DNA from: Macrostomum lignano
Lineage: Eukaryota
DNA: 64,000 nucleotides
Reading direction: 5' to 3'
Assembly: GCA_002269645.1 (NCBI GenBank)
Contig: NIVC01000633.1
Span: 62,001-126,000, forward strand
Within the stretch, counting starts at the first letter, position 1, and each line of letters begins with the position of its first letter. Below, piece after piece: positions 4,828-63,893 of the stretch. Made by a program: the position numbers and the translations under genes. The notes beneath the pieces were generated by a model. That model saw only the letters and a list, made by a program, of their open reading frames with translations, had not been told where the DNA came from and searched no databases.

Positions 4828-5689
4828 CCGGTTGACCCCGCGGGACCCCTGCACCCTGAACTCTGCTCAAAGTGACACCAGCGACAGGACTGCGGCATCC
4901 CTCCCGAATACTGATGTACATTTAAGGCTATCCGCTATACGCTATACGCTATCAACGCCATTGCATGCCTGCCTACTCATTTCCGTCTCGCCGATAATCC
5001 AGTAGCATGTTGTGCGCATATTTTTAATTTTTTAATCAGTTGAAATTTTTAATGTCTTTTTACGAGCTAGCTGCCGATGGTTAATATTAATATTTTATCA
5101 ATACTGCATGTTCTGCACTTACTACTCGCGCTCTTATTGCATACACAGTAGCGAGAATTGCGCGCAGCTGCTGCTTTTTTTGTCTGCATGAACTTTTTAT
5201 ATTGTGTTAAACGAAAAATCTTTGAAAATTTTCCTGGTTTCACTTCCCGCCAATTCCGAGGCAAAATTTACGATGTTTTATGCTTCTTTTAATTATACGC
5301 GATTTCGCTTCCGTTTTCAATTAAAAAATTATTATTATTCTCGTTTCGCTTTTGTGCCCGCAGTTGCGTCATTTCTGCCGCCACTGCTGCTGCAACTTCA
5401 AACTGTACAATAGCAATACTTGCGCAAGTATTGACTGTGCTCTGTGTGCGCTGCAATTCAAGTCTGCGCTGCTTTGTGTTGCGCTCCCTTCTCGCACTTC
5501 TCTTGGCTCTTTTTTAATTAGTTTGTCCGCTAAGCAATAAACGCATTGATGCTCTGAGGAGGTCGCCGATTGAGACCGCTTTGTGCATTCAGTAATTTCT
5601 GTGCGGCTTCTGCGGTCTTCTTTTACTAGCATTGCACAGTGCTGCCAAGTATAAGAACACTTCTGCAGTATGTTCTGTGGTCTTTTTGG

Positions 5690-6984
5690 GGTTGCGGGTT
5701 TTGGGGTGTGTTTTGGGGTGTGTTTTGGGGTTGGTGTTTTGGGGTTTGTGTTTTGGGGTTGTGTATTTTGGGGTTTGTGTTTTGTGGTTGTGTTTTGGGG
5801 TTGTGTGTTTTGGGGTTGTGTATTTTGGGGTTTCTGTTTTGTGGTTGTGTTTTGGGGTTGTGTATTTTGGGGTTGTGTGTTTTGGGGTTGTGTATTTTGG
5901 GGTTTCTGTTTTGTGGTTGTGTTTTGGGGTTGTGTATTTTGGGGTTGTGTGTTTTGGGGTTGTGTATTTTGGGGTTTCTGTTTTGTGGTTGTGTTTTGGG
6001 GTTGCGTGTTTTGGGGTTGCGTTTCTTGGGGTTGCGTGTTTTGGGGTTGCGTGTTTTGGGGTTGCGTGTTTTGGGGTTGTGTGTTTTGGGGTTGCGTGTT
6101 TTGGGGTTGTGTTTTGGGGTTGTGTATTTTGGGGTTGTGTGTTTTGGGGTTGTGTTTTGGGGTTGTGTATTTTGGGGTTTCTGTTTTGTGGTTGTGTTTT
6201 GGGGTGGTTATGTATTTTGGGGTTGTGTGTTTTGGGGTTGTGTATTTTGGGGTTTCTGTTTTGTGGTTGTGTTTTGGGGTTGCGTGTTTTGGGGTTGTGT
6301 GTTTTGGGGTTGTGTATTTTGGGGTTTCTGTTTTGTGGTTGTGTTTTGGGGTTGTGTATTTTGGGGTTGTGTGTTTTAGGGTTGTGTATTTTGGGGTTTC
6401 TGTTTTGTGGTTGTGTTTTGGGGTTGCGTGTTTTGGGGTTGCGTTTCTTGGGGTTGCGTGTTTTGGGGTTGCGTGTTTTGGGGTTGCGTTTCTTGGGGTT
6501 GCGTGTTTTGGGGTTGCGTGTTTTGGGGTTGGTGTTTTGGGGTTGCGTGCTTTGGGGTTGCGTGTTTTAAGGTTATGTGTTTTGGGGTTGCGTGTTTTGT
6601 GGTTGGTGTTTTAAGGTTGTGTGTTTTAGGGGTTGTGTGTTTTGGGGTTGGTGTTTTAAGGTTGTGTGTTTTGGGGTTGCGTGTTTTGGGGTTGGTGTTT
6701 TGGGGTTGGTGTTTTAAGTTTGTGTGTTTTGGGGTTGGTGTTTTGGGGTTGCGTGTTTTGGGGTTGCATGTTTTAAGGTTGTGTGTTTTGGGGTTTGTGT
6801 TTTGGGGTTGGTGTTTTAAGGTTGTGTGTTTTGGGGTTGGTGTTTTGGGGTTGCGTGTTTTTGGGTTGGTGTTTTGGGGTTGCGTGTTTTGGGGTTGCGT
6901 GTTTTGGGGTTGGTGTTTTAAGGTTGTGTGTTTTGGGGTTGCGTGTTTTGGGGTTGCGTGTTTTAAGGTTGGTGTTTTGGGGTC
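5690..6984. repeat. G/T-rich ~15-bp minisatellite with a TTTTGGGG core
   Basis: Dozens of TTTTGGGGTTGTGTG-like units. Confidence 0.95.
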
Positions 6985-7640
6985 TGATGATCATAGAGCT
7001 GCATTGACACTAGCCTGATGGTCATAGAGCTGCATTCACACTAGCCTGATGGTCATAGAGCTGCATTCACACTAGCCTGATGGTCATAGAGCTGCATTCA
7101 CACTAGCCTGATGGTCATATAGAGCTGCATTCACACTATCCTGATGGTCATAGAGCTGCATTGACACTAGCCTGATGGTCATAGAGCTGCATTGACACTA
7201 GCCTGATGGTCATATAGAGCTGCATTCACACTAGCCTGATGGTCATAGAGCTGCATTCACACTAGCCTGATGGTGATAGAGCTGCATTCACACTAGCCTG
7301 ATGGTGATAGAGCTGCATTCACACTAGCCTGATGGTGATAGAGCTGCATTCACACTAGCCTGATGGTGATAGAGCTGCATTCACACTAGCCTGATGGTCA
7401 TAGAGCTGCATTGACACTATCCTGATGGTCATAGAGCTGCATTGACACTAGCCTGATGGTCATAGAGCTGCATTCACACTAGCCTGATGGTGATAGAGCT
7501 GCATTCACACTAGCCTGATGGTCATAGAGCTGCATTGACACTAGCCTAATGGTCATAGAGCTGCATTGACACTAGCCTGATGGTGATAGAGCTGCATTCA
7601 CACTAGCCTGATGGTCATATAGAGCTGCATTCACACTAGC
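6985..7640. repeat. 31-bp minisatellite TGATGGTCATAGAGCTGCATTCACACTAGCC
   Basis: About 21 tandem units. Confidence 0.95.
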
Positions 7641-8011: not shown

Positions 8012-11000
8012 TCAGTCTCCGAGCTGCTGCCGGCCCTGCACCGCAGCGAGAGCGGCAGCGGCCAGCAGCAGCAGCGACTCGGACAGTCCGCAGGCCACAG
8101 GCGCGACTCCGCTGGCCTGATCGGACTGGAACCCGACCGGGATTTCGTTGGCCTGCAGGCTGTTGCACAGCTGGCCCACGCAGATCAGGCAGCCCGACAC
8201 GAACTGCAGAGTCCGGCAGTCAAATTTGCCGCAGCCTCCCATCAGGCTGACTTTGTTTGGGGTGTCCTGCGGGGTTCAGGAAGATTTGGGGTGTTCTGCG
8301 GGGTTCAGGAAGATTTGGGGTGTCTTGCGGGTTTCAGGAAGATTTGGGGTGTCCTGCGGGGTTCAGGAAGATTTGGGGTGTTCTGCGGGGTTCAGGGAGA
8401 TTTGGGGTGTTCTGCGGGGTTCAGGAAGATTTGGGGTGTCCTGCGGGTTTCAGGAAGATTTGGGGATGTCCCTCAGGTCTGGAAGATTGTCCCTCAGGTC
8501 TGGAAGATTTGGGGATGTCTCTCAGGTCTGGAAGATTTGGGGATGTCCCTCAGGTCTGGAAGATTTGGGGTGTCCTGCGGGGCTCAGGAGGATTTGGGAT
8601 GTCCTGTGGGGATCAGCATTGGGGATGTCCTGCGGGGATCAGCATTGGGGATGTCCTGTGGGGATCAGCATTGGGGATGTCCTGTGGGGATCAGCATTGG
8701 GGATGTCCTGCGGGGCTCAGGAGGATTTGGGATGTCCTGTGGGGATCAGGATTGGGGATGTCCTGCGGGGATCAGCATTGGGGATGTCCTGTGGGGATCA
8801 GGATTGGGGATGTCCTGCGGGGATCAGGATTGGGGGTGTCCTGCGGGGCTCAGGAGGATTTGGGATGTCCTGCGGGGCTCAGGAGGATTTGGGATGTCCT
8901 GCGGGGCTCAGGAGGATTTGGGATGTCCTGCGGGGATCAGGAGGATTTGGGATGTCCCTTTTAGAGTTCCGAAGTTTCAAGAATGGCTGGGCCGTGCCTC
9001 ACAGAGTAGCCAGTCGCGAAGTTGGGATCCGGTTCAGTGAGCTCAATTCGATGGCAGCTGTTGATGCCGGCACCGCAGTAGGCGGGCTCCTCCTTCACCT
9101 GCGGCACGTACTCCTTCTTGTCGCCATAAAAGATCTGCCTGACATCTCCGCTGTAGCTGTAGCATTGGCTGTGCTTCTGCTCGACTCTCTTCAGCAAGCC
9201 CGTGTTGCACCTGTCTGCACCGCTGCAGACCAGGCAGTTCGACGGGTCCTGCTTGCACTCGTCGCCTTTGGCGCAGTGCGCTTCGTAAACCTGCGGCATA
9301 AGTTAGTTAGTTGGTCAGTTTGCACGGGGATTGGCGCGCATGGATAAATACTCGCACGCACGGACAGCTCACACCGGGTGTTCAGGGGTCCTGACTTTCT
9401 CGTTGCCAGGTATGTACACTCTCTGTGTCTCTGGGGCTGGCATGTACACTCTCTGTGTCTCTGTGGCTGGCATGTACACTCTCTGTGTCTCTGGGGCTGG
9501 CATGTACACTCTCTGTGTCTCTGGGGCTGGCATGTACACTCTCTGTGTCTCTGGGGCTGGCATGTACACTCTCTGTGTCTCTGTGGCTGGCATGTACACT
9601 CTCTGTGTCTCTGGGGCTGGCATGTACACTCTCTGTGTCTCTGTGGCTGGCATGTACACTCTCTGTGTCTCTGTGGCTGGCATGTACACTCTCTGTGTCT
9701 CTGGGGCTGGCATGTACATCTCTGTGTCTCTGGGGCTGGCATGTACACTCTCTGTGTCTCTGTGGCTGGCATGTACACTCTCTGTGTCTCTGGGGCTGGC
9801 ATGTACACTCTCTGTGTCTCTGGGGCTGGCATGTACACTCTCTGTGTCTCTGGGGCTGGCTTTTATGAGCCAGAACTGCGCGAGTCATGAATTCGTCAGC
9901 TAGTTTTTGTTCTAAACGAGACAGGGACCGGAGGGTCAGAAAGGCAGGGACTGGAGGGTCAGAGAGGCAGGGACCGGAGGGTCAGAAAGGCAGGGACCGG
10001 AGGGTCAGAGAGGCAGGGACTGGAGGGTCAGAAAGGCAGGGACCGGAGGGTCAGAGAGGCAGGGACTGGAGGGTCAGAAAGACAGGGACCGGAGGGTCAG
10101 AGAGGCAGGGACTGGAGGGTCAGAGAGGCAGGGACCGGAGGGTCAGAGAGGCAGGGACTGGAGGGTCAGAAAGGCAGGGACCGGAGGGTCAGAGAGGCAG
10201 GGACTGGAGGGTCAGAAAGGCAGGGACCGGAGGGTCAGAGAGGCAGGGACCGGAGAGTCAGAGAGGCAGGGACTGGAGGGTCAGAAAGACAGGGACCGGA
10301 GGGTCAGAGAGGCAGGGACTGGAGGGTCAGAGAGGCAGGGACTAGAGGGTCAGAGAGGCAGGGACTGGAGGGTCAGAGAGGCAGGGACTGGAGTATCAGA
10401 GAGGTAGGGACTGGAGGGTCAGAGAGGCAGGGACTGGAGGGTCAGAAAGGCAGGGACTGGAGGGTCAGAAAGGCAGGGACTGGAGGGTCAGAGAGGTAGG
10501 GACTGGAGGGCCAGAGAGGTAGGGACCGGAGAGTCAGAGAGACAGGGACTGAAGAGTCAGAGAGGTACGGACCGGAGGGTCAGAGAGGCAGGGACTGGAG
10601 GGTCAGAGAGGCAGGGACTGAAAGGTCAGAGAGGCAGGGACTGGAGGGTCAGAGAGGCAGGGACTGGAGGGTCAGAGAGGCAGGGACTGAAAGGTCAGAG
10701 AGGTAGGGACTGGAGGGTCAGAGAGGCAGGGACTGAAAGGTCAGAGAGGTAGGGACTGGAGGGTCAGAGAGGTAGGGACTGGAGGGTCAGAGAGGCAGGG
10801 ACTGAAAGGTCAGAGAGGTAGGGACTGGAGGGTCAGAGAGGTAGGGACTGAAGAGTCAGAGAGGCAGGTGTCCCGCACAGGCGAAGTCGCAGTGCAGCCT
10901 CACGAGAGTCCTCTCGTCGCTGGCCAGCTGGATTCTCTCGAAGCAGCCGGTGTGGAAGGAGGCGCAGGGCTCCGAGTAGTTCTGCTGGCTGAAGTCCACG

Positions 11001-12095: not shown

Positions 12096-13050
12096 TGATT
12101 CCCGTTTGATCAGCAGCTGCAGTGTGACACCTGCTGCCTTGATTCCCGTTTGATCAGCAGCTGCAGTGTGACACCTGCTGCCTTGATCCCCGTTTGATCA
12201 GCAGCTGCAGTGTGACACCTGCTGCCTTGATCCCCGTTTGATCAGCAGCTGCAGTGTGACACCTGCTGCCTTGATTCCCGTTTGATCAGCAGCTGCAGTG
12301 TGACACCTGCTGCCTTGATTCCCGTTTGATCAGCAGCTGCAGTGTGACACCTGCTGCCTTGATTCCCGTTTGATCAGCAGCTGCAGTGTGACACCTGCTG
12401 CCTTGATTCCCGTTTGATCAGCAGCTGCAGTGTGACACCTGCTGCCTTGATTCCCGTTTGATCAGCAGCTGCAGTGTGACACCTGCTGCCTTGATTCCCG
12501 TTTGATCAGCAGCTGCAGTGTGACACCTGCTGCCTTGATTCCCGTTTGATCAGCAGCTGCAGTGTGACACCTGCTGCCTTGATTCCCGTTTGATCAGCAG
12601 CTGCAGTGTGACACCTGCTGCCTTGATACCCGTTTGATCAGCAGCTGCAGTGTGACACCTGCTGCCTTGATTCCCGTTTGATCAGCAGCTGCAGTGTGAC
12701 ACCTGCTGCCTTGATTCCCGTTTGATCAGCAGCTGCAGTGTGACACCTGCTGCCTTGATTCCCGTTTGATCAGCAGCTGCAGTGTGACACCTGCTGCCTT
12801 GATTCCCGTTTGATCAGCAGCTGCAGTGTGACACCTGCTGCCTTGATTCCCGTTTGATCAGCAGCTGCAGTGTGACACCTGCTGCCTTGATTCCCGTTTG
12901 ATCAGCAGCTGCAGTGTGACACCTGCTGCCTTGATTCCCGTTTGATCAGCAGCTGCAGTGTGACACCTGCTGCCTTGATACCCGTTTGATCAGCAGCTGC
13001 AGTGTGACACCTGCTGCCTTGATTCCCGTTTGATCAGCACCTGCAGTGTG
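12096..13050. repeat. 44-bp minisatellite TGATTCCCGTTTGATCAGCAGCTGCAGTGTGACACCTGCTGCCT
   Basis: About 21 near-perfect units with no spacers. Confidence 0.97.
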
Positions 13051-13616: not shown

Positions 13617-13945
13617 TGAGCCGAAGTGAGACAGACGGACGCCTGAAAGTCACTGACTGCCTTGAGCCGAAGTGAGACAGACGGACGCCTGAAAGTCATT
13701 GACTGCCTTGAGCCGAAGTGAGACAGACGGACGCCTGAAAGTCACTGACTGCCTTGAGCCGAAGTGAGACAGACGGACGCCTGAAAGTCATTGACTGCCT
13801 TGAGCCGAAGTGAGACAGACGGACGCCTGAAAGTCACTGACTGCCTTGAGCCGAAGTGAGACAGACGGACGCCTGAAAGTCACTGACTGCCTTGAGCCGA
13901 AGTGAGACAGACGGACGCCTGAAAGTCACTGACTGCCTTGAGCTG
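13617..13945. repeat. 46-bp minisatellite directly upstream of the DEG/ENaC-1 ATG
   Basis: About 7 units of TGAGCCGAAGTGAGACAGACGGACGCCTGAAAGTCACTGACTGCCT. Confidence 0.95.
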
Positions 13946-13947
13946 AA

Positions 13948-16900
13948 ATGAGCGCAGCAGCTCAGACGCCGAGCGGCAACGCTGTCGTTGCCGACTCCTC
14001 ACGCAGAGACAGGGATCCGCGCCAGTTCGTGGCCAGCTTCCTGGACTACACCACCGCGCACGGACTCGGCCGCTTCGCTCACCAGTCCAGCCTGCTGGGC
14101 AGGATGATCTGGCTGACCTTCCTGCTCGGCACCTACAGCGGCTTCGTCTACCACCTGTACACCCTGTTCGGCAGGTTCCTCACCGCTCCGGTGCTCACCA
14201 CCATGACAATGTCCACGCTGTCGTACGAGTTCCCGGATGTGTACATCTGTCCCGCACAAGCCGTCACACTGAGCAGGGCCATTGAGCAGATGCCGATAGG
14301 CCTAATCAACTGGAGAGAGAATGACAGGACAGTCCCGATCGATTTCAAAATACACTTCTATGAGTTCGACTTGGAGTCTCGGAACTACGCTGCGCAGAAC
14401 AAGCCGGCGCAAGCTCTGATGAATGTGCTGCAGAGTGCCGAGAGCTCGCTCATGGCCGAGCTGCAGTTCCCCAAGAGCAGTGAGCTCCTAATATATCTGC
14501 ATCTAAAAGTTCATCTTTCTCAGTATTTTATGAGTAGTTCACTGAGTCCCACTGTGCAACGAACTTCTCAGGCAGAGTGGAGTGCAGGACCACGCTCTCC
14601 GGTGAGGAGTACTCGGGCAACGCCAGTGTTGCGGTTGTCTACGACCGGACGAAGATGCGAGTCACGGCTTCGAACATTTCTGGCGTGCTGCCGCCATTCA
14701 GGACGTACAGGCAGTGCATGCAATGGAACGATGCGGCTCAGAGGCTGAGAAGTGTGAACACCAGTTTAACACACAGCCTCGCTGACCGACTGCTGGCGCT
14801 GAACTTCTCCGACAGCGAGTCTCGCTGTCGCTCCCCGCCAGGGCTCCCGCTGTCCGAGTTTTTCCCCATCGCGAATCGTGAGTCAAGAGATTGGTTTCGC
14901 AAGCTTTATTCAGCTTTATTCGACATTCCAACCGAACCTGGAATTACAGGCCCCATGCTGCGGCTTGTTGGTTGCTTTGAGGCGAACTTCACCGACCATG
15001 AATTCAACTACACCTGCGACACGGAAGGCATTGTGACTCACGAGACCTGCGCTCACTGTTGCGCTTCGCTCGACTTCAGCCACATCGCGCTGCAAGTTGA
15101 CAGCTGCCTGTGCGGAGCGAGTCCCCCAAGCTCCGGCAATGACAGCGGCGTCTGCAGCAGTCGCTGCGCCAGCAACGATCAGCAGCACTGCGGGTCAGCA
15201 TCCGCCATCACGGTGCTGCAGATCGGAGACACAGGTGAGTCTCTTGAATTCTCATCAGCAGAAGCCTCTATAACTCTAGCCGAGGCTCAATCCGCTTGCA
15301 GAGCCGAGGCCGCTGCAGGTGGGAAACTTCAGCAACCTCACAGTCTTCTCGCACGGGCCCTACTGCTTCTTCACTGATGAGCGAGACAGGCTGGGCGCTG
15401 CGTTCTGCGATGTGCCTTTCTGCCGTGAGTGAGTTTGCCATACCGAGGATTACCTCCTCAGTTACACCGCACCAATGCTACACTTTTGCAGCGATGTCAG
15501 GTGCTTACGACTGCATCGTGAGCTCTGAGAACAAGACCCTTGAGCGGCTGACTCGGGCCCGGTACACCGGTAGGAAGAACTACACAATCACTGGGAAGCC
15601 GTGCGTGCCGTGGAGCAAGCTGGAGAAGATACAAGAGGATACGTACATAAGAATGGGTAACTATGCGACCGCTGCATGCACAGAATGCCATAAAATGCCC
15701 GAGTTCGAATTCATATCCATGACTTGCAAACGCCGACTACTCACAGGTTATAATTACCACAAGCAGTTCGGATTTCACATTCAGACTCCGGATTTCAATC
15801 CCAACAGCAGCGACAATTTCTGCCGATCGGCACAGATCGTTATCGACCACGGGTCGTACTTTAGTTCGCACGAGGCTTCGTAAGAAAATCTTCCTATCGA
15901 ATTCTTTCTTTGACTTCTGCTGCATAAAACTTTAAAGATGTTTAACTCAACCTCTGCTTCTAACTCGTATTTATAAAAAATAATTTCAGTCGCTTCGCAC
16001 AAGAAATGTCTGATGTGCCGGGCTGCATTCCGGACATCATGGGCTGGGGCGGTCTGTTTGATGCTGACTTCGAGCCCTGCGAGATCCCGCTGTGTTGTAA
16101 GTCGCTTTTTCAGGGCCTTTAGAGCCCTCTTTGTTGAACAAACGATTGATAGGAAATTCGCATTACAAAATTTCTTCCCTAATCCAGCATTCACATAACA
16201 TTTAACAGATGCCGCGGTCCCCAGCGTGACGGGCGCCGTCAGAGACTCAGTCGGCAGCCACCTGCTGGCCCGACAGTTCGGCAGCGACCTCAACGCCGGC
16301 CTCGCCGAGTGCAGCTTTGCTGGCCAGAAGTGCACCAAGGACGACTTTGTGAACGTCGCCCACCCGCAGCTGGGCATGTGCCACAAGTTTCTCAAGCAGC
16401 GCTTCACCGCCAACATGACCAGCACGCAGTTGGCGGAGAGCCAGCTGTCCATCAAGTACTTCACGGACTCGACAGACTCCAAGGGTCAGACGGTGTCCAA
16501 CATCAACAAGCTGACGCGGGTGGTGCGAGACAGCCACGGCTCCGATGCGACTCAGGTCGCATTCAAGGTGAGTCTTCGTCGGTCGCTGAGCGTCTCAGTG
16601 TCTCACGCAATCTCTGAGCTTGGCTGCTCAACCGCGAACCCGCAGGCGGTCATCGTCCCGGATAGCTCGTTCCCGTGGGCCTCGAAGGGAATCGATGTGG
16701 CCACCGCTCAGCGCATGGACGTGCAGCTGAGGTTCGACAAGTATTCCAGACTGTCAACTACATCAAGGCCCTGCCTTGAGACTACGGAGCCGATCACCTA
16801 CCGACTGCCGTCCTGGAAGTCAGCTCCATTTAATGAGAACCCGGAGTGAGTCTTGATGCAGAAACATTTTATCGCCGTGAAGACTGCGCACTGACTGATC

Positions 16901-18242
16901 AATGATTCCCTTTACAGCGACAGTTTCGACTTAAATGCGGTTGCCATGGTGACTGATTGGTGGCTGAAAGTTGCCGCAATGGAAGTGCAGCTTCGGAAGC
17001 AGAAGCAAGGTGCATTGAGGTATGGACCATAGGCTTTAGCTTGTGCGAGTGTGACTGCCAGGTTTGCAAAAGTTGCACGCATTTCCTAAATTTGCAGTTC
17101 GCTGTCGGAATTCGACTTAGAATTCAAGCTGACTGACCGAGACGACTGCATCAACACACACGTTGTGAAGAAGTTCATCGCGGAATGCCACTGCCTGCCG
17201 TCGTTCCTGCCGATTCCGGTGGAGTACTTTTCGAATTACACCTACTGTTTTGCTTTTCAAGCCGCTGGAAACGTTTCCATGGAAACGGACATGTGCTACA
17301 GAAAGCAGAAGTCGAAGGTGCTGGAGTACCAGTTTGCTGCGGTCCGGCTGTGCCAGTCTCCCTGCCGTACAGCCGAGTACAGCGTCCGCCACATCACCTA
17401 TCCGTGGCCGAACCTGAACGGTCTGCAGTCGTTCTCGTTTCTGAAAGCCCTGGCCACCGCGTTTGGATACGGCAGCAACCCCAGCGGCCTGAGGGGCCTG
17501 AACAGCATCTACAGCATCTACCTGAGATCCCTGAGGGATTCGGCAATTCCTGTCAGCAATCGGAGCGCGACAGAAATCCTGAGCTTTCAAAACGAGCTGA
17601 CGGTGCTGCAGAACCGACTGGCTCAGCTGACGGTCCAGGCCTGGACGTCATTCGGCCAGGAGATCTTGGAGGAGGAGGCCTACCCGGCCAAGAACCTCGT
17701 GGCCGACATTGGAGGTGACAATGAGCAGATTCTGTACTCAGTGACCCTTGAGATGACAATGAGCAGATTGTGTACTCAGTGACCCTTGAGGTGACAATGA
17801 GCAGATTCTGTACTCAGTGACCCTGGAGGCGACAATGAGCAGATTGTGTACTCAGTGACCCTTGAGATGACAATGAGCAGATTGTGTACTCAGTGACCCT
17901 GGATCCCAAGTCTCTCAGGAATGTCAGCTTTCGCATCTCATGCCTAAAATTGCAGGTACCTTGGGTCTTTGGTCGGGAATTTCCATTCTGACCGTTTGCG
18001 AGCTGCTCGAGCTGCTCATCTACATCGGCCTGGCCATCGGCTACAAATTCCACAGAGTCGCTGCGCCCCGCAACCGGAACAATGGCGGCCCTGGAGCCAA
18101 CAACAACTTCAACAACAATTGCACCAATACCGGCAGTGTCACAACCGTGGCCGCATCTGTTGCTGGGTGCTCGGAGATGACACAGTCGGCTGTGAGTCAG
18201 GATTCTGTTCAGGTTGAGTTGGAGTCCAATTCCAGGATGTAA
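13948..18242 (+). CDS. DEG/ENaC/ASIC-superfamily channel subunit (paralog 1) with a kringle[WSC]-kringle insertion, ~1037 aa
   Basis: 11 exons (13948-14479, 14572-14877, 14950-15234, 15302-15424, 15492-15656, 15747-15879, 15990-16096, 16209-16567, 16646-16845, 17098-17714, 17956-18242) total 3114 nt in frame. TTAHG pre-TM1 motif, TM1, FPDVYIC, CSFAGQKC...GMCHKF, Cys-rich thumb, and LVADIGGTLGLWSGISILTVCE TM2. Confidence 0.92.
16940..16953. promoter_or_regulatory. Candidate RFX X-box GTTGCCATGGTGAC in DEG/ENaC-1 intron 8
   Basis: Matches GTNRCC-N(0-3)-RGYAAC with one mismatch; adjacent reverse CCAAT (CTGATTGG). Confidence 0.4.
17715..17900. repeat. 38-bp minisatellite starting exactly at the donor of the last DEG/ENaC-1 intron
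   Basis: Five units of GTGACAATGAGCAGATTCTGTACTCAGTGACCCTTGAG. Confidence 0.95.
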
Positions 18243-18794
18243 CGCGAAGTTGTGAATGTGGTTTGAGAATTGATGCCGGAAACTAGTCCAAGAAGTCTGA
18301 GAAGTACAGGTCCAAGCCCATGAACATCTATTGACATCTGTTGGCCTTGCTGTGCTTGGGAGCTCCTATCTACTAAAGAATTATATAAGCAAATTTTAAA
18401 GAATGTTTTTTAATTACAAGTATGTTTCACTCGCTTCAGTTTAAATCTTTAATAACAAACCTAACGATGTACGAGTATGTTTGGTAAGACATTTTGATGT
18501 TAGTCCTCTTCATCTGTTTGTCAGATCAGAAATAGTTTTCACTGAAACCTTTTTCTTTTGCTTACCTGTTTTTTTCCCTTCCTCTTACAAAACTTGACCT
18601 TTTAAATTCTTATTGTCACTCCTGAATAAATTTGTTTTAATTTAGACGTGCCTGTAGACACTTTTCCACCGATGGCTGCACTTTCTCGGCATCTAACTCA
18701 GAGAAGCGTTGAACTTTTTAACCCTGAAAAAGTTACTGAAACTTTATCATGAATACCAAGATAGACTTTAATACGCAATACAACAGCTGCTAGT

Positions 18795-21083: not shown

Positions 21084-21245
21084 ACCGCTGTGTTCGGCTG
21101 TGGAGACTGGCACAGCCGGACCCCAGCAAACTGGCACTCCAGCACCACCTTCAACTGTTGCTATCTTTAGCACATGTCCGTTTCCATGGACACGTTTCCA
21201 CCAGCTTGAGAATCAAAACAGTGAAGGTGTCAATGAACTATTTAT
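21084..21245 (-). pseudogene. Decayed inverted fragment of DEG/ENaC-1 exon 10
   Basis: The reverse complement aligns to ~17225-17385 (GGAAACGT.TCCATGGAAACGGACATGTGCTA; GGTCCGGCTGTGCCAGTCTCC) with in-frame stops (TAC->TAA, AAG->TAG) and indels. Confidence 0.85.
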
Positions 21246-32089: not shown

Positions 32090-35000
32090 TCAGACTTGAG
32101 CATTATTATGCCTTACTGCGTCCGTATCGAGCGCGACCATCTCTGACTCCGGCCTGGCCGACTCTTCGGGCTGACCGTCGGCGTTTTTTGACTGCATCCG
32201 GGACTGCGCCTGCACTCTGGCAGCCAGCGCCTGTCCCAGGTAGATGAAGAGCTCCAGCAGCTCGCAGATAGTTAGGATTGAGATGCCGGACCAGAGACCC
32301 AGAGCTCCTGAAATTCATTTTGTATTAACGGTTTTTCAATACTGAAAGACTTGTTGAGCATGATCAACCTGGACCACTTACCCCCGATGTCGGCCACCAG
32401 GTTCTTGGCTGGGTAGGCCTCCTCCTCTGAGACTTCGTGGCCGCGGGACTGCCAGGCCTGGACCGTCAGCTGAGCCAGGCGGTTCTGCAACGCCGCCAGC
32501 TCGCTTTCGAAGCTCTGAATTGCCTCGGTGCTCCGGTTGATGACGGGAGTGTCAGAGAGGTTCTGAGCCTTAAGGTAAAGGTAGTAGATGCTTGAGGCGC
32601 CTCTCATCAAGCTGATATCGTGTCGATAGCCAAAGTCGGCGGCCAACTTCTTCAGAAAGTCGAGAGACTGCACCGAGAGCAAGTTCGGCCACGGGTAGGT
32701 GATGTAGCGGGTGCTGAAGTCGGTCTTGCTGCAGGGCGACTTGCATTCGTTCATGGCTTCAAAATGGTACTGCGTGATCTTCGACACCTGCTCAATGTAG
32801 CACTTCTCAGTGTTGGCCGAAATGTTTCCCCTTGAGTACATGTCGAAGCAGTAGCTGAGCTTTTTGAACCGCTCTTCTTGAATGGGAAGCATCCCCGGCA
32901 GGCATCGGCAGGTGTTGGTGAATTTTTCGACAACATAAGTGTTGACGCAGTTCTCTCTGTCCGAGACTTTGAACTGACTACCCGAGACTGTCAGTGCGCT
33001 GAAGTCATGGAGATTATTGCGAAATTCGATTTGACATGCTGAAATTCCCAGAAGCAGAGAAGCGCAAAAAAGGAGGGTTTTATGCAAAATCTTACCTTGA
33101 GCCGTTCAGTTTAAGCAGCGCGTTGCGAAACATAGACAGCTTCAGCGTCCAGTTGGAACATCGCATAATTTCCTGCGCGTCCGAGTTGACGCTGGAAGCA
33201 AATTTTTAGTTTTAAACAGCTTTGATATTTACAATATTGCAGACTAAATATAAGGAAATAAAACTTTTTGCTTTCTTTACCCAGAGTCCTCATTTGACGT
33301 AAACAGCTTCCATGACGGCAGTCGGTAGGTGATTGGCTCCGTAGTCTCAAGGCAAGGCCTCGATGAGGTGGACAGTCTGGAGTACTTGTCGAATCTAAGA
33401 TGCACGTCCATGCGCTGAGCGGTGGCCACATTGACGCCCTTTGAGGCCCACGGGAACGAGCTATCCGGGACGATGACCGCCTGCGGGTTCGCGGTTGAGC
33501 AGCCAAGCTCAGAGATTGCGTGAGACACTGAGACGCTCAGCGACCGACGAAGACTCACCTTGAATGCGACCTGAGTCGCATCGGAGCCGTGGCTGTCTCG
33601 CACCACCCGCGTCAGCTTGTCGATGTTGGACACCGTCTGACCCTTGGAGTCTGTCGAGTCCGTGAAGTACTTGATGGACAGCTGGCTCTCCGCCAACTGC
33701 GTGCTGGTCATGTTGGCGGTGAAGCGCTGCTTGAGAAACTTGTGGCACATGCCCAGCTGCGGGTGGGCGACGTTCACAAAGTCGTCCTTGGTGCACTTCT
33801 GGCCAGCGAAGCTGCAGTCGGCGAGGCCGGCGTTGAGGTCGCTGCCGAACTGTCGGGCCAGCAGGTGGTCACCGACGGAGTCTCTGATTGTGGCTGTCAC
33901 GCTGGGGACCTCGGTGTCTAAAGAAATTCATTCGGTACAGAATGCTCTGAAAACAATGCCTAGAATATAATAATAAATAATAACTGAGAAACAGATCCAG
34001 CTCAATGGTCACTGGCACAACTCACAACAGAGTGGCACGTTACAGGTCTGAAAGATCATGTTAAACAGGTAGCCAAATTTTATCGTAATGGACGGAATGT
34101 TGACCCAGAAATCTTCCGGTATGCACACAGGAACCTCCGAATCGATGGCGCTAAACCGCCTAAAACAATAGGAAAGATTTTGGAGCGCTGCAACAAGCAC
34201 ACATACGCTACTTGCGATGCAATAGAAGCTTACTGGAAATCCTTGGGCCCGTGGATGTTGACAGAATCGACCACAACGCTAACCGGACGGCAGTAATTGT
34301 CGCTCTCGCCTTCAAGCCTGTCCGGAGTCTGGATAAGCATTTCCCGCACTTCGTCCATGAAGCCAACTTCCGAACCTAAATTGGAATTTGACTGGTTCGG
34401 TCAGGCGAAATTAAATTTGCCAGCGGCACAGGTGAGCAATGCAATCGAAGCTCTTACCGCGGCGCGCCTTGAGAACTTGCTCAATTGTGGACAGCTGACT
34501 CCAGGGCATGCACCGCCGGCCAGTGCTGGTGACGTTCCGCCGTCCGGTGTAGCGCGACAGCCTTTGCTGCTGAGTCAGCTTGTCCTCGGAGCTCACGATG
34601 CAGTCGTAGTTTCTCGAAATTTCTGGATTGAGCGATGGAACGTCAAGTATTTCATTCACGAATCGAAGTCGTCTTTGAAAGGAAAAGTCAGGCAACATGT
34701 TGGAAACTCACGGCAGTAGGGAATTTCGCAGAATGCAGCGTTCAGCTTGTCGCTCAGCTCATCCGCGAAAAAGCAGTAGGGCCCGCTGGAGATTGCGTCC
34801 AGGTCGCTGAAGTTCGCGACGTGCAACGGCCTGCTGCCTACAAAGTGGAATGCGTGCCTTGAGCTGCGAGTTACGAGTCTGCAGAATGACCTGATTTTGC
34901 CAGCAATATACAAGTGACCATAAAAATCTGTCCCAGCTCGTCAACTTATCGGTTTTATTGAGCTACTTTTGAGTAGCAACCAATCTCTAACCCGCTCTCC

Positions 35001-36294
35001 GACTATCCCACCTACCGTTGTCCCGAATCTGCAGAACAGTGACGGCAGTTTCCGATCCACAGATTGCCGAATTGTCGTGGAGGCAGGAGGCGTTGCACAC
35101 GCTGCTGCTGTTCTCGTAGCCGCCAATGCTGCTCCCGCAGAAGCAGTCCTGGCGGCTGATCGCCATGTACTGGAAGCTGCGCCTGCCGCAGCATTCAGCG
35201 CAGGTTTCGAGCGAGCTCAAGCCGCCCCGGTAGCAGGTGAAGTTGAACGAACTCGAGTTGGTCAGCGCAAGGGGAAGGCAGCCGGCGTGCCGAAACACCG
35301 AGCCTGTGGTGTTGGCAGGACCGGAAATCTCCATCCGTGTGACCTGATCGAGACAAACAAATCGGACAAACAGATGGAAACTCACGGCTAGCGATAGGAA
35401 AGAACTCAGACAGAGGCAGCCCAGGCGGCGAGCGGCACCGGGACTCGCTGTCTGAAAAGTTCAGCGCCAGCAGTCTGTTAGCCAGGCCACTTTCGCCGAG
35501 GCTCAGCAGTTTTTGAGCTGCATCGTTCCACCTCATGCACTGCTTGACGCCTCTGTACGGACTGGGCGTGAACGCCGAAGTGTTGATGGACGTCACAGTC
35601 ATAGTGGTGAATCCGTAGACAACTGCTGAGCTCACATTCCCGGAGTACTCTTCTCCAGAGGGCGTTCTTCGACACTTGGCTGCGTCGGCTGAAGAAATGA
35701 AATTGCGTTTTAGGATTGGGTTCATGGCAATGGTTTGAAGAGCAACTCGTCCAGACTGCACAGTGCGCGCTGTCTTCACAGCAGTCAGGAGGACTCACCG
35801 ATATCGAAAAACTGAAAGTAAGACATTATGATCTCCTCCATGCTGTGCAGAACGCTCAGCAAAGCCTTCGTCATGTCGTTCAGCTCCAAATCGTACCGTC
35901 CGCTGGAGAGATCAAACGAGTAAATTCCGATTTTTTCCTCGACGCTTTTCTTTAAGAAAAACTCGCCAAAGGTGACGTCGTTTTGGGGCAGCTTTTTAAA
36001 AATCCTGCTCATGGTAACGGCGTTAGTTGGGCAGATGTACACATCCGGGAACTCGAACTGTAGAGTGGACACGGTCATTTTAGTGAGCACCGGAGCCTGC
36101 AGAAACCTCTCGAACAGGGTGGACAGGTGGTAGGCAAAGCCGCTGTAGGTGGCGAGCAGGAAGGAGACCCAGATCACCCTGCCGATGAGGTTGGACTGCT
36201 CGGAGAAGCGGCCCAGCCCGTGGGCGGTGGTGTAGCCGCAGAACCGCTTCACGGGCGAGCTGAGTCCTTCCGGTGCGTCAGAGCTGCTGCCCAT
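32090..36294 (-). CDS. DEG/ENaC/ASIC-superfamily channel subunit (paralog 2) with a kringle[WSC]-kringle insertion, ~1015 aa
   Basis: 11 exons (36294-35799, 35688-35386, 35303-35016, 34837-34712, 34622-34458, 34375-34234, 34159-34026, 33917-33559, 33480-33281, 32998-32382, 32307-32090) total 3048 nt in frame. Intron positions and phases are the same as paralog 1. TTAHG, FPDVYICP and LVADIGGALGLWSGISILTICE are present. Confidence 0.92.
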
Positions 36295-37839
36295 GGCTGA
36301 GAACTCGGCTGAGAAGTTAACCAATGAAGCTAGTTAGTCAATTTAGTTTTGCGACGCGAATGCAGTTGCTTGCTTGCATTAAAAATGGCATGAAAGCTTG
36401 GTCACCGGCTTATATCGCTCCTGCTGGGGTCGGTCAGTTCATAGCTATGAATAATGACCCCCAGGCTGTCCCTCATTGGCCAGCTCACTCAGAGAAGCCT
36501 GTCACTTGGCTGTGTCGTGGCCTGCTAGCTGACAAGAGAGTAAAAAGAACAGAGTAACAGAGTAATAAAAAGCGAGCCACAAAGTTTCCATCCAAAAAAC
36601 ATTTTGAACAACATTCATTCGGGCGAACACGGCAAAACTGTTGTGCAGTTAATTCTTTTTATAATTGCAGCTGTTTGCTCAAGCTGCAGGGGGTGAGCAT
36701 GCAAGGTGGATAGTACAATGGCACAACTGCAGCCAGAGTGCCTCAGCTGGTACTCAAATTTATTGCACGTGAACGAGTGCATGACAAGTTAGTGACTGCA
36801 AAGATATATAGAAACGATATGGGTGAGTGCAGAATCTCAGGCATTTTGAATCAACTTGAACTGTCCAAATTTTTTCAACAATTTTTCTGTTGCTTCTAAT
36901 AAATAGGGGGGATTCTTTCCTCTCATAGAAATCCGAACAGATGTTAGAGGCGAGTTAGGAAACTCTGTATGCAGCTTAAACCTTTTGTTTTATCAAGGCG
37001 TGCGGGGCAGGGTTGCGAGCCCTGGTGCCTAAGATTATAAATGCAGCTTTTCAAAAAGAATTGAACCAAAATGGTTTCTTTAATACGCTCGTTAGATATC
37101 AGTAAACAGTTGGTCCTCTCGTCCTTATCCAGACTATGTATTCCTTTGCTATTGGCCTTGCCCGATCTCACAATCGTCTTGCGTTAAAAACGTTACCTGT
37201 CACAGGCTGTCACACCACTGACAATTGATGGGATCAGTGACAGCTCAATCCACAAAAATGATATGAAGCAGGTAGCTGCCCACAAAGCAGCCGATTTAAA
37301 CGGAAGCCAATTCGCTAAATGGAGAGCTGAATTTTTCCAAGTTTGAGCTGGACAATAAAACTGATAAACTACTGAGCCTGGTAAAATGCTAATTTGGGTA
37401 AAAGGAGCCTGAGAATTCTGTGGAAGATTGCTTAATGCATGCCTTTCGACCGCCCCGTTCTGACAATTAGTAACAGGCTTGCTGATTAACTCTGAGCAAA
37501 TTGAATTGCCTCTGCGGGTCTGTGGGCCATAAACTGGCAAAAACCGTGCATGCAGGCAGGCAAGCGATGCCAACAGTTATTAGGGATGGGAAATAAAAAA
37601 TACCCAAGCTGCCAGGGGGTGACAGAAGCTCCCTTCCCCTGCGCACCTCAGCACTAATTGGAACTGCATCCTGCATGTTTTTTTTAAGCTGAATGTTTTA
37701 CAAACTGAAGGCAGATGACGTTGCCTTCATACCAGGCACATGAAAGCCGGGCTCTGAGCTGTAAATTGCTTGCACTATCGCCCAGTTCAATGCTATTCAA
37801 TAGTTGATGTACATGATGCATCCTGTCCTTCGATCAAAG

Positions 37840-39320
37840 CGCATGCTGCAGCTGACAGTGTCCCAATGGTCAAAGCACACGCTGCAGCTGACAGTGTCCC
37901 AATGGTCAAAGCACACGCTGCAGCTGACAGTGTCCCAATGGTCAAAGCACACGCTGCAGCTGACAGTGTCCCAATGGTCAAAGCACATGCTGCAGCTGAC
38001 TGTCCCAATGGTCAAAGCACACGCTGCAGCTGACAGTGTCCCAATGGTCAAAGCACACGCTGCAGCTGACAGTGTCCCAATGGTCAAAGCACACGCTGCA
38101 GCTGACAGTGTCCCAATGGTCAAAGCAAATGCTGCAGCTGACAGTGTCCCAATGGTCAAAGCACACGCTGCAGCTGACAGTCCCAATGGTCAAAGCACAC
38201 GCTGCAGCTGACAGTGTCCCAATGGTCAAAGCACACGCTGCAGCTGACAGTGTCCCAATGGTCAAAGCAAATGCTGCAGTTGACAGTGTCCCAATGGTCA
38301 AAGCACACGCTGCAGCTGACAGTGTCCCAATGGTCAAAGCACACGCTGCAGCTGACAGTGTCCCAATGGTCAAAGCACACGCTGCAGCTGACAGTGTCCC
38401 AATGGTCAAAGCAAATGCTGCAGTTGACAGTGTCCCAATGGTCAAAGCACACGCTGCAGCTGACAGTGTCCCAATGGTCAAAGCAAATGCTGCAGTTGAC
38501 AGTGTCCCAATGGTCAAAGCACACGCTGCAGCTGACAGTGTCCCAATGGTCAAAGCACATGCTGCAGCTGACAGTGTCCCAATGGTCAAAGCAAATGCTG
38601 CAGTTGACAGTGTCCCAATGGTCAAAGCACACGCTGCAGCTGACAGTGTCCCAATGGTCAAAACACATGCTGCAGCTGACAGTGTCCCAATGGTCAAAGC
38701 ACATGCTGCAGCTGACAGTGTCCCAATGGTCAAAGGACATGCTGCAGCTGACAGTGTCCCAATGGTCAAAGCACACGCTGCAGCTGACAGTGTCCCAATG
38801 GTCAAAGCACATGCTGCAGCTGACAGTGTCCCAATGGTCCAATTGGTCAAAGCACACGCTGCAGCTGACAGTCCCAATGGTCCAGATGGTCAAAGCACAC
38901 GCTGCAGCTGACAGTCCCAATGGTCCAGATGGTCAAAGCACACGCTGCAGCTGACAGTCCCAATGGTCCAATTGGTCAAAGCACACGCTGCAGCTGACAG
39001 TCCCAATGGTCCAGATGGTCAAAGCACACGCTGCAGCTGACAGTCCCAATGGTCCAGATGGTCAAAGCACACGCTGCAGCTGACAGTCCCAATGGTCCAA
39101 TTGGTCAAAGCACACGCTGCAGCTGACAGTCCCAATGGTCCAATTGGTCAAAGCACACGCTGCAGCTGACAGTCCCAATGGTCCAATTGGTCAAAGCACA
39201 CGCTGCAGCTGACAGTCCCAATGGTCCAGATGGTCAAAGCACACGCTGCAGCTGACAGTCCCAATGGTCCCAATGGTCAAAGCACACGCTGCAGCTGACA
39301 GTCCCAATGGTCCAGATGGC
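37840..39320. repeat. 36-bp minisatellite TGCAGCTGACAGTGTCCCAATGGTCAAAGCACACGC, with a longer variant at the right end
   Basis: About 40 units. Confidence 0.97.
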
Positions 39321-40086: not shown

Positions 40087-40119
40087 TGCGGCTGCAGCCA
40101 GGTGGCGGGGATGAGGGTT

Positions 40120-57030: not shown

Positions 57031-63893
<6,863 letters not shown>

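What the first reader, a model, noticed from the sequence alone, without database searches (positions are those of the whole stretch)
13948..18242. DEG/ENaC ion channel carrying two kringle domains and a WSC domain in its finger region
Seen: a complete DEG/ENaC frame (HG motif, TM1, FPDVYIC, thumb cysteines, TM2) is interrupted between FPDVYIC and CSFAGQKC by ~373 aa. The insert holds two 6-Cys kringle patterns (C..Y.G...C..W...CR.P...P.C...C.IP.C) and a WSC domain. Established: this region is the finger domain, where vertebrate ENaC has its protease-released GRIP segment, nematode degenerins have regulatory Cys-rich inserts, and FaNaC binds its peptide. Kringles bind proteins or lysine ligands; WSC domains are carbohydrate-binding or cell-surface stress-sensing modules (yeast Wsc1, Kremen, polycystin-1). 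Inference: a trimeric channel with built-in receptor modules (6 kringles + 3 WSC per trimer), potentially gated by glycan, matrix or protease contact, or by mechanical tethering. I do not recognise this architecture from any described DEG/ENaC.
Basis: partly seen in the sequence, partly recalled or inferred. Interest (0 to 1): 0.92.

Follow-up and report, generated by a model that had tools for sequence, protein, structure and literature searches.

The report
Flatworm sodium channel with kringle–WSC insert
This is an intact Macrostomum lignano (flatworm) DEG/ENaC ion-channel gene whose outer "finger" region carries two divergent kringle domains, with a sugar-binding-type WSC domain nested inside the first. 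This built-in receptor-like module is seen in about ten paralogs of this one species, and I found no paper describing it.

Summary
Window 13948-18242 (+) encodes a clean 12-exon, all GT-AG, 1071-aa DEG/ENaC subunit (Pfam ASC E 3.4e-38). A 374-aa cysteine-rich module sits between ASC profile positions 98 and 148, the finger region.

- **WSC:** passes Pfam's threshold when scanned alone.
- **Kringles:** both fall below Pfam's threshold. Profile-profile comparison with bona fide kringles gives 97% probability (E about 1e-11). Reversed and shuffled controls give 2.7% or less.
the WSC exon lies inside kringle 1, between Cys3 and Cys4, so this is a nested domain. There are 12 exons, not 11.

The organism is Macrostomum lignano. 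A second paralog with identical intron positions lies in the same window (about 36294-32094, minus strand). About ten paralogs exist, and every cysteine of the module is invariant among the five or six aligned. A search of 1.84 billion representative proteins found the whole module only in this species, always inside a DEG/ENaC.

UniProt auto-names these proteins "WSC domain-containing protein". No paper describes the architecture.

Function is inferred, not shown. The most likely role is a ligand or matrix-tether sensor coupled to gating through the finger. No furin sites support an ENaC-like protease switch. I rate this a new variant of a known kind.

The parts
13948..14479 (+). Exon 1 (aa 1-178): cytosolic N-terminus with HG motif (H38-G39), TM1 (53-74), beta1 FPDVYIC (95-101) and the first part of the finger. 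It ends in phase 1.
   Evidence: Pfam ASC profile 1-98 matches aa 31-127. P0001 is identical here.
14572..14877 (+). Exon 2 (aa 178-280, phase 1-1): N-terminal half of kringle 1. Cys1 C182, Y191-x-G193, Cys2 C226-x-x-W229, Cys3 C263-R-x-P. It has a 22-residue loop insertion and a helical NDAA...LL segment.
   Evidence: hhalign of this half alone matches kringle template positions 1-29, P 6.5e-5. The full kringle 1 alignment is. These residues are invariant in 5-6 paralogs.
14950..15234 (+). Exon 3 (aa 280-375, phase 1-1): WSC domain with 10 Cys (C288...C360), nested between Cys3 and Cys4 of kringle 1.
   Evidence: Pfam WSC 33.7 bits against a cut-off of 27.8. Best PDB sequence hits are Kremen1 and yeast Wsc1. 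The AlphaFold model of the paralog matches Wsc1 7PZ2 with TM 0.69-0.73.
15302..15424 (+). Exon 4 (aa 375-416, phase 1-1): C-terminal part of kringle 1. GPYC(396)FF...FC(410)DVPFC(415) supplies Cys4-6.
   Evidence: hhalign alone matches kringle template 65-87, probability 95.8%, P 6.5e-9. It aligns with the C-halves of tandem kringles.
15492..16096 (+). Exons 5-7 (15492-15656, 15747-15879, 15990-16096; aa 416-551): kringle 2. C423, Y440-T-G, C453-x-x-W456, N494-F-C496-R, P525-G-C527, C545, C550, with long loop insertions. Together these exons are phase 1-1.
   Evidence: hhalign probability 97.5%, E 5e-12. All 64 PDB profile hits are kringles. Pfam Kringle is sub-threshold at 17 bits.
16209..17714 (+). 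Exons 8-11 (16209-16567, 16646-16845, 16918-17019, 17098-17714; aa 551-977): rest of the finger (alpha3 equivalent, by spacing), CSFAGQKC (585-592), beta-ball/palm, thumb cysteines (788-860), knuckle and pre-TM2 DIGG.
   Evidence: Pfam ASC profile 148-285 and 296-455. Matches to FaNaC in the PDB search.
17956..18242 (+). Exon 12 (aa 977-1071 plus stop): TM2 with G-I-S selectivity motif (984-986) and an Asn-rich cytosolic tail.
   Evidence: Aligned with FaNaC TM2.
32094..36294 (-). Paralogous gene B (= BOX15_Mlig006056g1 / P0002, 1049 aa, 56% identical): same 12-exon structure and the same kringle1[WSC]-kringle2 insert. It is convergent with gene A, about 14 kb away.
   Evidence: tblastn; exon map; protein alignment.

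Best explanation
**Shown.** This is an intact gene for a DEG/ENaC (ASC-family) channel subunit of the flatworm Macrostomum lignano. A rigid, disulfide-rich, probably glycosylated module of 374 aa is built into the finger region. The module is kringle 1 with a WSC domain nested in its Cys3-Cys4 loop, followed seven residues later by kringle 2.

**Origin (inferred).** The module was assembled by exon shuffling. Exons 2, 3, 4 and 5, and exons 6+7 together, are each phase 1-1 units. The WSC is a single symmetric exon lying within kringle 1. The module has since been kept under purifying selection through the radiation of about ten paralogs.

**Mechanism (inferred, not shown).**
- The subunit forms a canonical trimeric Na+ channel; all pore and gating motifs are present.
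- By spacing, the module sits at the alpha2/alpha3 turn of the finger. These are the helices that move on agonist binding in FaNaC and pull the thumb to open the pore.
- I therefore propose it acts as a built-in extracellular receptor or tether. Binding of a glycan or protein partner (WSC = carbohydrate or surface contacts; non-lysine-type kringles = protein contacts, as in Kremen or ROR), or force transmitted from such an anchor, would displace alpha2/alpha3 and gate or modulate the channel.
For: **Gene integrity.** 12 exons, GT-AG throughout, no stop codons. Eight of the 11 splice junctions are identical in the independent UniProt model P0001.

**Channel identity.** ASC 132 bits. Best solved relatives are FaNaC (E 2.9e-13) and ASIC5. 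HG, FPxVxxC, DIGG and GxS motifs are present.

**Insert position.** Between ASC profile positions 98 and 148.

**Domain identity.**, with controls. The profile of the insert hits multi-kringle proteins across the kringle 1-C / kringle 2-N junction with E down to 1e-24 in a library of 1.84 billion proteins. The AlphaFold model of the gene B insert has pLDDT 79 and pTM 0.72. Its top Foldseek hits are Kremen1 (KR-WSC-CUB, about 210 aligned columns) and the yeast Wsc1 mechanosensor domain.

**Selection.** All 22 cysteines and the hallmark residues are invariant across paralogs that are 31-50% identical in the insert. The insert diverges only slightly faster than the core.

**Expression.** The GenBank models of paralogs P0002 and P0011 include the insert. 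They derive from an RNA-seq genome-guided transcriptome (PMC5730564).

**Gating relevance of the site.** In FaNaC1 the agonist moves alpha2/alpha3a by 3-5 A and thereby the thumb and the pore. This corner of the trimer matters for gating across the superfamily (PMC11026163).
Against: - There are no functional, localisation or ligand data of any kind.
- Placement at alpha2/alpha3 rests on spacing relative to FaNaC and ASIC anchors, not on a structure of the whole ectodomain.
- Pfam does not call either kringle.
- Foldseek returned no isolated kringle structure in its top 50.
- The second AlphaFold model was helped by an alignment that I seeded with kringle and WSC fragments, so it is not independent of the sequence evidence.
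- That model is of paralog B, not of gene A.
- By my reading of the alignment against residue numbering recalled from memory, the canonical kringle lysine-binding residues are absent. The binding specificity is therefore unknown.
- Skipping exons 2-7 would stay in frame, so an insert-less isoform could be the main product of gene A.
Confidence: 0.5

Rival explanations
1. The module is an anchoring, sorting or adhesion device rather than a gating element. It fixes the channel to a particular extracellular matrix, cuticle-like or ciliary surface, or to a partner cell. Gating would then be by another stimulus (peptide, protons, direct membrane stretch).
For: WSC and kringle domains are generic binding modules. 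A membrane-bound multi-kringle protein in flatworm anchor cells is proposed to hold a lysine-rich adhesive (PMC9229212). The core is closest to peptide-gated FaNaCs. The module is a compact, independently folding unit (pTM 0.72).
Against: The insertion sits in the part of the finger that drives gating in FaNaC rather than at a terminus or a peripheral loop. It is joined to the flanking finger sequence with no long low-complexity linker visible on either side. No data discriminate this from the main explanation.
Confidence: 0.25
2. The module is an ENaC-GRIP-like autoinhibitory domain. The channel would be silent until a protease excises part of the insert.
For: It lies in the finger, the region that also holds ENaC's protease-sensitive sites. 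PMC11026163 notes protease-binding sites in this corner of ENaC. The precise position of ENaC's GRIP segment is my recollection and was not checked here. Kringles are common in protease systems.
Against: There is no furin-type R-x-K/R-R motif in gene A, P0002, P0005, P0008 or P0011. The 22 paired cysteines would hold cleaved fragments together. The fold is unrelated to GRIP.
Confidence: 0.07
3. Annotation artefact or minor isoform. The kringle/WSC exons are usually skipped, or belong to a separate nested transcript. The real product would be an ordinary DEG/ENaC of about 698 aa.
For: Exons 2-7 together are phase 1-1, so skipping them keeps the frame and gives a better contiguous ASC match (144 bits). 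The only database model of gene A itself (P0001) has retained introns and a spurious N-terminus.
Against: The same exons with the same intron positions are kept, with invariant cysteines, in about ten paralogs. RNA-seq-derived GenBank models of paralogs join them to the channel exons. Introns are 67-112 nt, and the module has no start codon, signal peptide or terminator of its own. No insert-less close relative was found.
Confidence: 0.1
4. Gene A is a decaying duplicate in a recently duplicated, repeat-rich genome and makes no functional channel.
For: The window is packed with minisatellites. One array runs into the start codon and another sits in intron 11. A stray thumb-exon fragment lies at 21229-21101.
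Against: The reading frame is uninterrupted, all splice sites are canonical, and every family-invariant residue is retained.
Confidence: 0.03

Closest known systems
FMRFamide-gated Na+ channels (FaNaC) and neighbouring spiralian DEG/ENaC clades
   Same: ASC fold and motifs. FaNaCs are the best sequence matches among solved structures (7YVB E 2.9e-13, 8ON7 E 1.7e-12). The finger is the ligand-sensing, gating-driving element (PMC11026163).
   Different: A FaNaC finger has about 89 residues between beta1 and the CxxxGxxC motif; here there are about 483, including the 374-aa module. There is no evidence of peptide gating. The three M. lignano DEG/ENaCs tested by Dandamudi et al. 2022 are different genes, and the two whose sequences I read are of ordinary length.
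Kremen1/2 (kringle-WSC-CUB Wnt/Dkk co-receptors)
   Same: The only well-known family I recall that pairs a kringle with a WSC domain. It is the top Foldseek hit of the model (5FWV, E 1e-5, about 210 aligned columns) and the top PDB sequence hit of the WSC.
   Different: In Kremen the domains are sequential and followed by a CUB domain and a single TM helix. Here the WSC is nested inside the kringle, a second kringle follows, there is no CUB, and the module is embedded in a channel. RMSD is about 17 A over the joint alignment, so the domain arrangement differs.
ENaC finger/GRIP domain
   Same: A lineage-specific accessory domain inserted in the DEG/ENaC finger that controls gating.
   Different: Unrelated fold; GRIP works by furin-type cleavage, and those motifs are absent here.
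C. elegans degenerins (MEC-4/MEC-10) with cysteine-rich ectodomain regions and extracellular tether partners
   Same: Extra cysteine-rich extracellular segments, and a proposed link to extracellular matrix for mechanical gating (from my own knowledge, not checked here).
   Different: Those cysteine-rich regions are not kringle or WSC. The matrix-binding modules there reside on separate proteins, whereas here they are fused into the channel.
WSC-bearing surface sensors: yeast Wsc1, polycystin-1
   Same: A WSC domain in the ectodomain of a mechano- or surface-sensing membrane protein. The Wsc1 sensor domain superposes on the model's WSC with TM about 0.7.
   Different: Those proteins are not pore-forming DEG/ENaC subunits. 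The WSC here has two extra invariant cysteines (10 against 8).

Membership tests
DEG/ENaC (Pfam ASC, PF00858) | Match to the ASC profile above the gathering score | tested here: met
   132.3 bits against a cut-off of 23.6, E 3.4e-38. 144 bits with the insert removed.
DEG/ENaC (Pfam ASC, PF00858) | Two TM helices flanking a large ectodomain; HG motif before TM1; FPxVTxC after TM1; GxS in TM2 | tested here: met
   H38-G39; TM1 53-74; FPDVYIC 95-101; TM2 979-1006 with G984-I-S986. All are invariant in paralogs where present.
DEG/ENaC (Pfam ASC, PF00858) | Forms a trimeric amiloride-sensitive cation channel | not testable with these tools
   Needs expression and electrophysiology.
Kringle (PF00051) | Match to the Pfam Kringle profile above the gathering score (34.3 bits) | tested here: not met
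   Kringle 2: 17.2 bits (15.6 alone). Kringle 1: no hit.
Kringle (PF00051) | Homology to bona fide kringles by profile-profile comparison, with controls | tested here: met
   Kringle 2 probability 97.5%, E 5e-12. Kringle 1 (WSC excised) probability 97.1%, E 7e-11, covering template 1-87 of 87. Reversed and 20 shuffled controls give probability 2.7% or less. 64 of 64 PDB hits are kringles.
Kringle (PF00051) | Six cysteines in the C1...C6 pattern with Y-x-G, C-x-x-W, C-R-x-P and P-x-C landmarks | tested here: met
   Kringle 1: C182, C226, C263, C396, C410, C415. Kringle 2: C423, C453, C496, C527, C545, C550. All are invariant in paralogs. The 1-6, 2-4, 3-5 disulfide pairing itself could not be checked because no coordinates were available.
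Kringle (PF00051) | Compact contiguous domain of about 80 residues | tested here: not met
   Kringle 1 is 146 aa and is split by a 95-aa WSC. Kringle 2 is 135 aa with long loop insertions.
Kringle (PF00051) | Lysine-binding pocket (anionic NPDxD, aromatic PW / W-x-Y) | tested here: inconclusive
   In the alignments these positions read RSPPG / GPY / AAF in kringle 1 and RSAQI / PGC / FEP in kringle 2. The residue roles are recalled from memory, and not all kringles bind lysine.
WSC (PF01822) | Match to the Pfam WSC profile above the gathering score (27.8 bits) | tested here: met
   33.7 bits for the exon 3 product alone; 27.0 bits in the context of the whole protein. Paralog P0011 scores 39.1 bits.
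WSC (PF01822) | WSC fold | tested here: met
   Tested for paralog B only. The AlphaFold WSC region has pLDDT 79-93. Foldseek matches Wsc1 7PZ2 with TM 0.69-0.73 and RMSD 2.4-3.3 A.
Kremen family | Sequential KR-WSC-CUB ectodomain on a single-pass receptor | tested here: not met
   No CUB hit. The WSC is nested, not sequential. The host protein is a two-TM channel.
ENaC GRIP-type protease switch | Furin-type cleavage motifs flanking an inhibitory tract in the finger | tested here: not met
   No R-x-K/R-R in gene A or in 4 of 5 paralogs.

The most novel reading that the evidence does not exclude
A fused receptor-channel: a DEG/ENaC that carries its own Kremen-like kringle/WSC binding module in the gating finger. 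An extracellular glycan or protein, or force through a matrix anchor, would then open a sodium channel directly without separate tether proteins. The roughly ten-member family, seen so far only in Macrostomum lignano, would be a set of differently tuned contact, matrix or chemical sensors.
Probability: 0.3. Interest if true: 0.85.

Novelty: new variant of a known kind. Interest (0 to 1): 0.66.

Why it matters
How DEG/ENaC channels are coupled to what lies outside the cell is a long-standing question, above all for the 'tether' model of mechanosensation. In known cases the matrix-binding parts sit on separate proteins.

Here recognisable binding modules are fused into the finger, the region shown structurally to drive gating in FaNaC. 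This gives a natural one-polypeptide system in which binding and gating can be dissected by deletion and domain swap.

Macrostomum lignano has transgenesis (PMC5730564), and RNAi and in situ hybridisation are used in related flatworm work (PMC9229212), so the biology is testable.

It is also a clean example of exon shuffling producing a domain nested within a domain: a phase 1-1 WSC exon inside a kringle, itself inside an ion-channel ectodomain. It further shows that standard Pfam thresholds miss both kringles, so database architecture searches would not reveal it.

Tried and rejected
1. **AlphaFold with paralogs only.** The insert with five paralogs as alignment gave mean pLDDT 46. The model was unusable and was not searched.
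2. **Spliced gene A sequence for structure prediction.** I used P0001 and P0002 substrings instead.
3. **MAFFT with whole kringles added (A7).** Their C-halves were misplaced onto the WSC, so the alignment was discarded. I replaced it with tandem-kringle junction fragments, which aligned correctly (A8 and A9).
4. **Word-indexed protein search with the insert profile.** It returned only 3 M. lignano proteins and missed obvious relatives. The exhaustive representative search was used for conclusions.
5. **Search for a donor gene.** I looked for a non-channel protein with KR+WSC, or with the nested arrangement, among the top 150 profile hits. None was found: hits are pure multi-WSC or pure multi-kringle proteins.
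6. **Have these channels already been tested?** The three M. lignano DEG/ENaCs in Dandamudi et al. 2022 have different gene IDs. The two whose sequences I read have different N-termini and ordinary length.
7. **Insert-less close relatives.** The apparent ASC-only hits of about 500 aa (P0162, P0163, P0165) are truncated models that start inside kringle 2.
8. **Foldseek for kringle structures.** None appeared in the top 50. Kringles have little regular secondary structure and these carry long insertions, so I do not count this as strong evidence against.
9. **Expression data for these genes in the literature.** None found.


Full report
**1. What is in the sequence**

I translated 13900-18300 in three frames and joined the open segments at GT-AG sites. 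This gives one 12-exon coding sequence on the + strand:

| Exon | Coordinates |
|---|---|
| 1 | 13948-14479 |
| 2 | 14572-14877 |
| 3 | 14950-15234 |
| 4 | 15302-15424 |
| 5 | 15492-15656 |
| 6 | 15747-15879 |
| 7 | 15990-16096 |
| 8 | 16209-16567 |
| 9 | 16646-16845 |
| 10 | 16918-17019 |
| 11 | 17098-17714 |
| 12 | 17956-18242 |

All 11 introns (67-241 nt) are GT-AG, and the product is 1071 aa.

An independent database model, UniProt A0A1I8IV52 (P0001), is residue-for-residue identical across eight of the 11 junctions. It differs only by retaining introns 2 and 8, mis-modelling intron 11 so that TM2 is lost, and carrying a spurious N-terminal extension from repeat DNA.

**2. Organism and family**

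All significant protein hits are from the free-living flatworm Macrostomum lignano.

The window holds a second paralog on the minus strand at about 36294-32094. This is BOX15_Mlig006056g1 (P0002), 56% identical to gene A and convergent with it. It has the same 12 exons and matching intron positions.

Counting distinct sequences gives about ten family members:
- gene A
- P0002/P0004
- P0003/P0005
- P0006/P0010
- P0007/P0018
- P0008
- P0011/P0155
- P0014+P0165
- P0035
- P0162/P0163

Some of these may be copies from this genome's known redundancy (PMC5730564). Apparent short 'ASC-only' relatives are truncated models that begin inside kringle 2. I found no close relative lacking the insert.

**3. 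The channel part**

Pfam ASC scores 132 bits, E 3.4e-38. The following are all present and invariant among paralogs:
- HG motif (H38-G39)
- TM1 (53-74)
- FPDVYIC (95-101)
- CSFAGQKC (585-592)
- thumb cysteines (788-860)
- DIGG and TM2 with G-I-S (984-986)

Among solved structures the best sequence matches are FMRFamide-gated channels (7YVB 2.9e-13; 8ON7 1.7e-12), then ASIC5, then ASIC1.

The ASC profile is interrupted. Positions 1-98 match residues 31-127 and positions 148-285 match residues 580-721. Joining exon 1 directly to exon 8 gives one contiguous match (profile 1-285) and a higher score of 144 bits.

The foreign module therefore lies in the variable finger region. By spacing relative to FaNaC1 and ASIC1 anchors, about 74 residues precede it (room for alpha1 and alpha2) and about 34 follow it before the CxxxGxxC motif (room for alpha3). 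This alpha2/alpha3 placement is inferred, not modelled.

**4. The insert**

*WSC.* The exon 3 product scores 33.7 bits against Pfam WSC (cut-off 27.8). Its only meaningful PDB sequence hits are Kremen1 and the yeast Wsc1 sensor domain.

*Kringle 2 (exons 5-7).*
- Pfam gives only 17 bits (cut-off 34.3).
- A profile of six paralogs hits 64 PDB sequences at E up to 10, and every one is a kringle protein: prothrombin, ROR1/2, tPA, HGF, uPA, plasminogen, apo(a). The best E is 8.8e-4.
- hhalign against 12 bona fide kringles taken from Pfam-verified multi-kringle proteins gives probability 97.5%, E 5e-12.

*Kringle 1.*
- Pfam sees nothing.
- When the WSC exon is excised, the exon 2 plus exon 4 product aligns to the whole kringle template (1-87 of 87) with probability 97.1%, E 7e-11. 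All six cysteines are in register.
- Taken separately, exon 2 matches template 1-29 (P 6.5e-5) and exon 4 matches template 65-87 (P 6.5e-9).
- The WSC is therefore nested in the Cys3-Cys4 loop of kringle 1.

*Controls.* The reversed kringle profile, 20 column-shuffled profiles, and the WSC profile against the kringle profile all give probability 2.7% or less. Cysteine richness does not explain the matches.

*Exhaustive search.* In a search of 1.84 billion representative proteins, the insert profile hits multi-kringle proteins through the stretch spanning the end of kringle 1 and the start of kringle 2. This is the pattern expected for tandem kringles (E down to 1e-24). Those fragments align column for column.

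*Composition.* The module has 22 cysteines (6 + 10 + 6) and 12 of the protein's 17 N-glycosylation sequons.

**5. Structure prediction**

| Model | Target | Alignment | Result |
|---|---|---|---|
| 1 | gene A insert via the P0001 substring | 5 paralogs | mean pLDDT 46, unusable |
| 2 | gene B insert (P0002) | 43 rows: paralogs plus WSC fragments plus tandem-kringle fragments | mean pLDDT 79, pTM 0.72 |

Foldseek against the PDB puts Kremen1 first (KR-WSC-CUB; E 1e-5; 203-224 aligned columns, but RMSD about 17 A). The Wsc1 mechanosensor domain is next (TM 0.69-0.73).

Caveats:
- The alignment was seeded with the very families being tested.
- The model is of the paralog, not gene A.
- I had no coordinates to check disulfides.
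- No isolated kringle structure appeared in the top 50.

**6. Conservation, origin and expression**

Every cysteine of the module and the landmark residues are invariant across the five or six aligned paralogs. The landmarks are Y-x-G, C-x-x-W, C-R-x-P, GPYC and IQTPD. These paralogs are only 31-50% identical in the insert. The insert is slightly more diverged than the core: 48/41/37/31/31% against 54-65% down to 36-39%. This indicates purifying selection since before the family radiated.

Exons 2, 3, 4 and 5 are each phase 1-1, and exons 6+7 together are phase 1-1. This is the classic signature of shuffled extracellular modules. Skipping exon 3 alone would restore a contiguous kringle, and skipping exons 2-7 would give an ordinary channel.

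The GenBank BOX15_Mlig models come from an RNA-seq genome-guided transcriptome (PMC5730564). The full-length, insert-containing P0002 and P0011 are therefore transcript-backed. Gene A itself has only the weaker P0001 model.

**7. Distribution**

In the exhaustive search, proteins matching the whole module are exclusively M. lignano DEG/ENaCs. No non-channel KR+WSC protein that could be the donor turned up among the top 150.

One limit applies: other Macrostomum species are probably poorly represented in that library.

**8. Mechanism**

*Shown:* architecture, intactness, conservation and position.

*Inferred:* in FaNaC1 the agonist pocket is made by finger helices alpha1-alpha3. Agonist binding moves alpha2/alpha3a by 3-5 A, which drags the thumb and dilates the pore. 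The authors note that this corner matters for gating across the superfamily (PMC11026163). A rigid 374-aa binding module spliced into that turn is well placed to transmit ligand binding or tether force to the gate.

The kringles lack the canonical lysine-pocket residues. This is my reading of the alignments, with residue roles recalled from memory. They more likely make protein contacts, as in Kremen or ROR.

A protease switch of the ENaC type is disfavoured because no furin motifs are present.

A pure anchoring role cannot be separated from a gating role with the present data.

**9. Known or new**

Literature searches found no description of this architecture. The term pairs were ENaC/degenerin with kringle, WSC with amiloride-sensitive channel, degenerin with WSC, Macrostomum with kringle, ENaC or amiloride-sensitive.

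The M. lignano DEG/ENaCs tested electrophysiologically by Dandamudi et al. 2022 are different genes; the two whose sequences I read are of ordinary length.

The proteins do exist in UniProt, auto-named 'WSC domain-containing protein' with WSC+ASC. The kringles are not annotated there, because they fall below threshold.

**Verdict.** This is a real feature and a new variant of a known kind. It is of solid interest to channel and domain-evolution specialists, with its function still open.

Noticed in passing
window 32094-36294 (-): A second, full-length paralog of the same kringle1[WSC]-kringle2 DEG/ENaC (BOX15_Mlig006056g1). It is convergent with gene A and has the same 12-exon layout. The window copy differs from the GenBank protein at a few percent of residues, which suggests another haplotype or duplicated copy.
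   Followed up: yes
window 21101-21229 (-): An isolated fragment about 70% identical to gene A residues 818-859 (thumb, exon 11), with no other channel exons nearby. It is probably a pseudo-exon remnant.
   Followed up: partly
window 13617-13952: A 46-bp minisatellite (7.3 copies, 97% matches) runs right into the start codon. The ATG at 13948 sits where the repeat unit has GTG, in the last, degenerate copy. The true 5' end (possibly a trans-splice acceptor) is unverified.
   Followed up: partly
window 17712-17900: A 38-bp x 5 tandem array fills most of intron 11, the one long intron (241 nt). The older gene model P0001 read through it and lost TM2.
   Followed up: partly
window 62580-63878 (-): A large exon encoding a polycystin-2-like cation channel (Pfam PKD_channel E 6e-81, Polycystin_dom E 3.5e-55). 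This is another sensory-type channel gene in the same window.
   Followed up: partly
window 39700-40170 (-) and 41250-41807 (-): Housekeeping genes: ribosomal protein L22e (E 5e-49) and a U1-C-type zinc-finger protein (zf-U1, E 7.6e-19).
   Followed up: partly
window 43830-45650 (-): A 606-aa GC-rich (about 67%) open reading frame with no Pfam match. It may be a real single-exon gene or a chance ORF in GC-rich DNA.
   Followed up: no
whole window (e.g. 9-844, 5684-7640, 9918-10868, 12096-13050, 37834-39326, 57587-59252, 60595-61449): About 40 distinct minisatellite or microsatellite arrays cover a large part of the window. They generate many long spurious ORFs and strong local GC- and AT-skew swings.
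   Followed up: partly
gene A exons 2-7 (14572-16096): Exons 2, 3, 4 and 5 are each phase 1-1, and exons 6+7 together are phase 1-1. In-frame isoforms lacking the WSC alone or the whole module are therefore possible and worth looking for in RNA-seq.
   Followed up: partly
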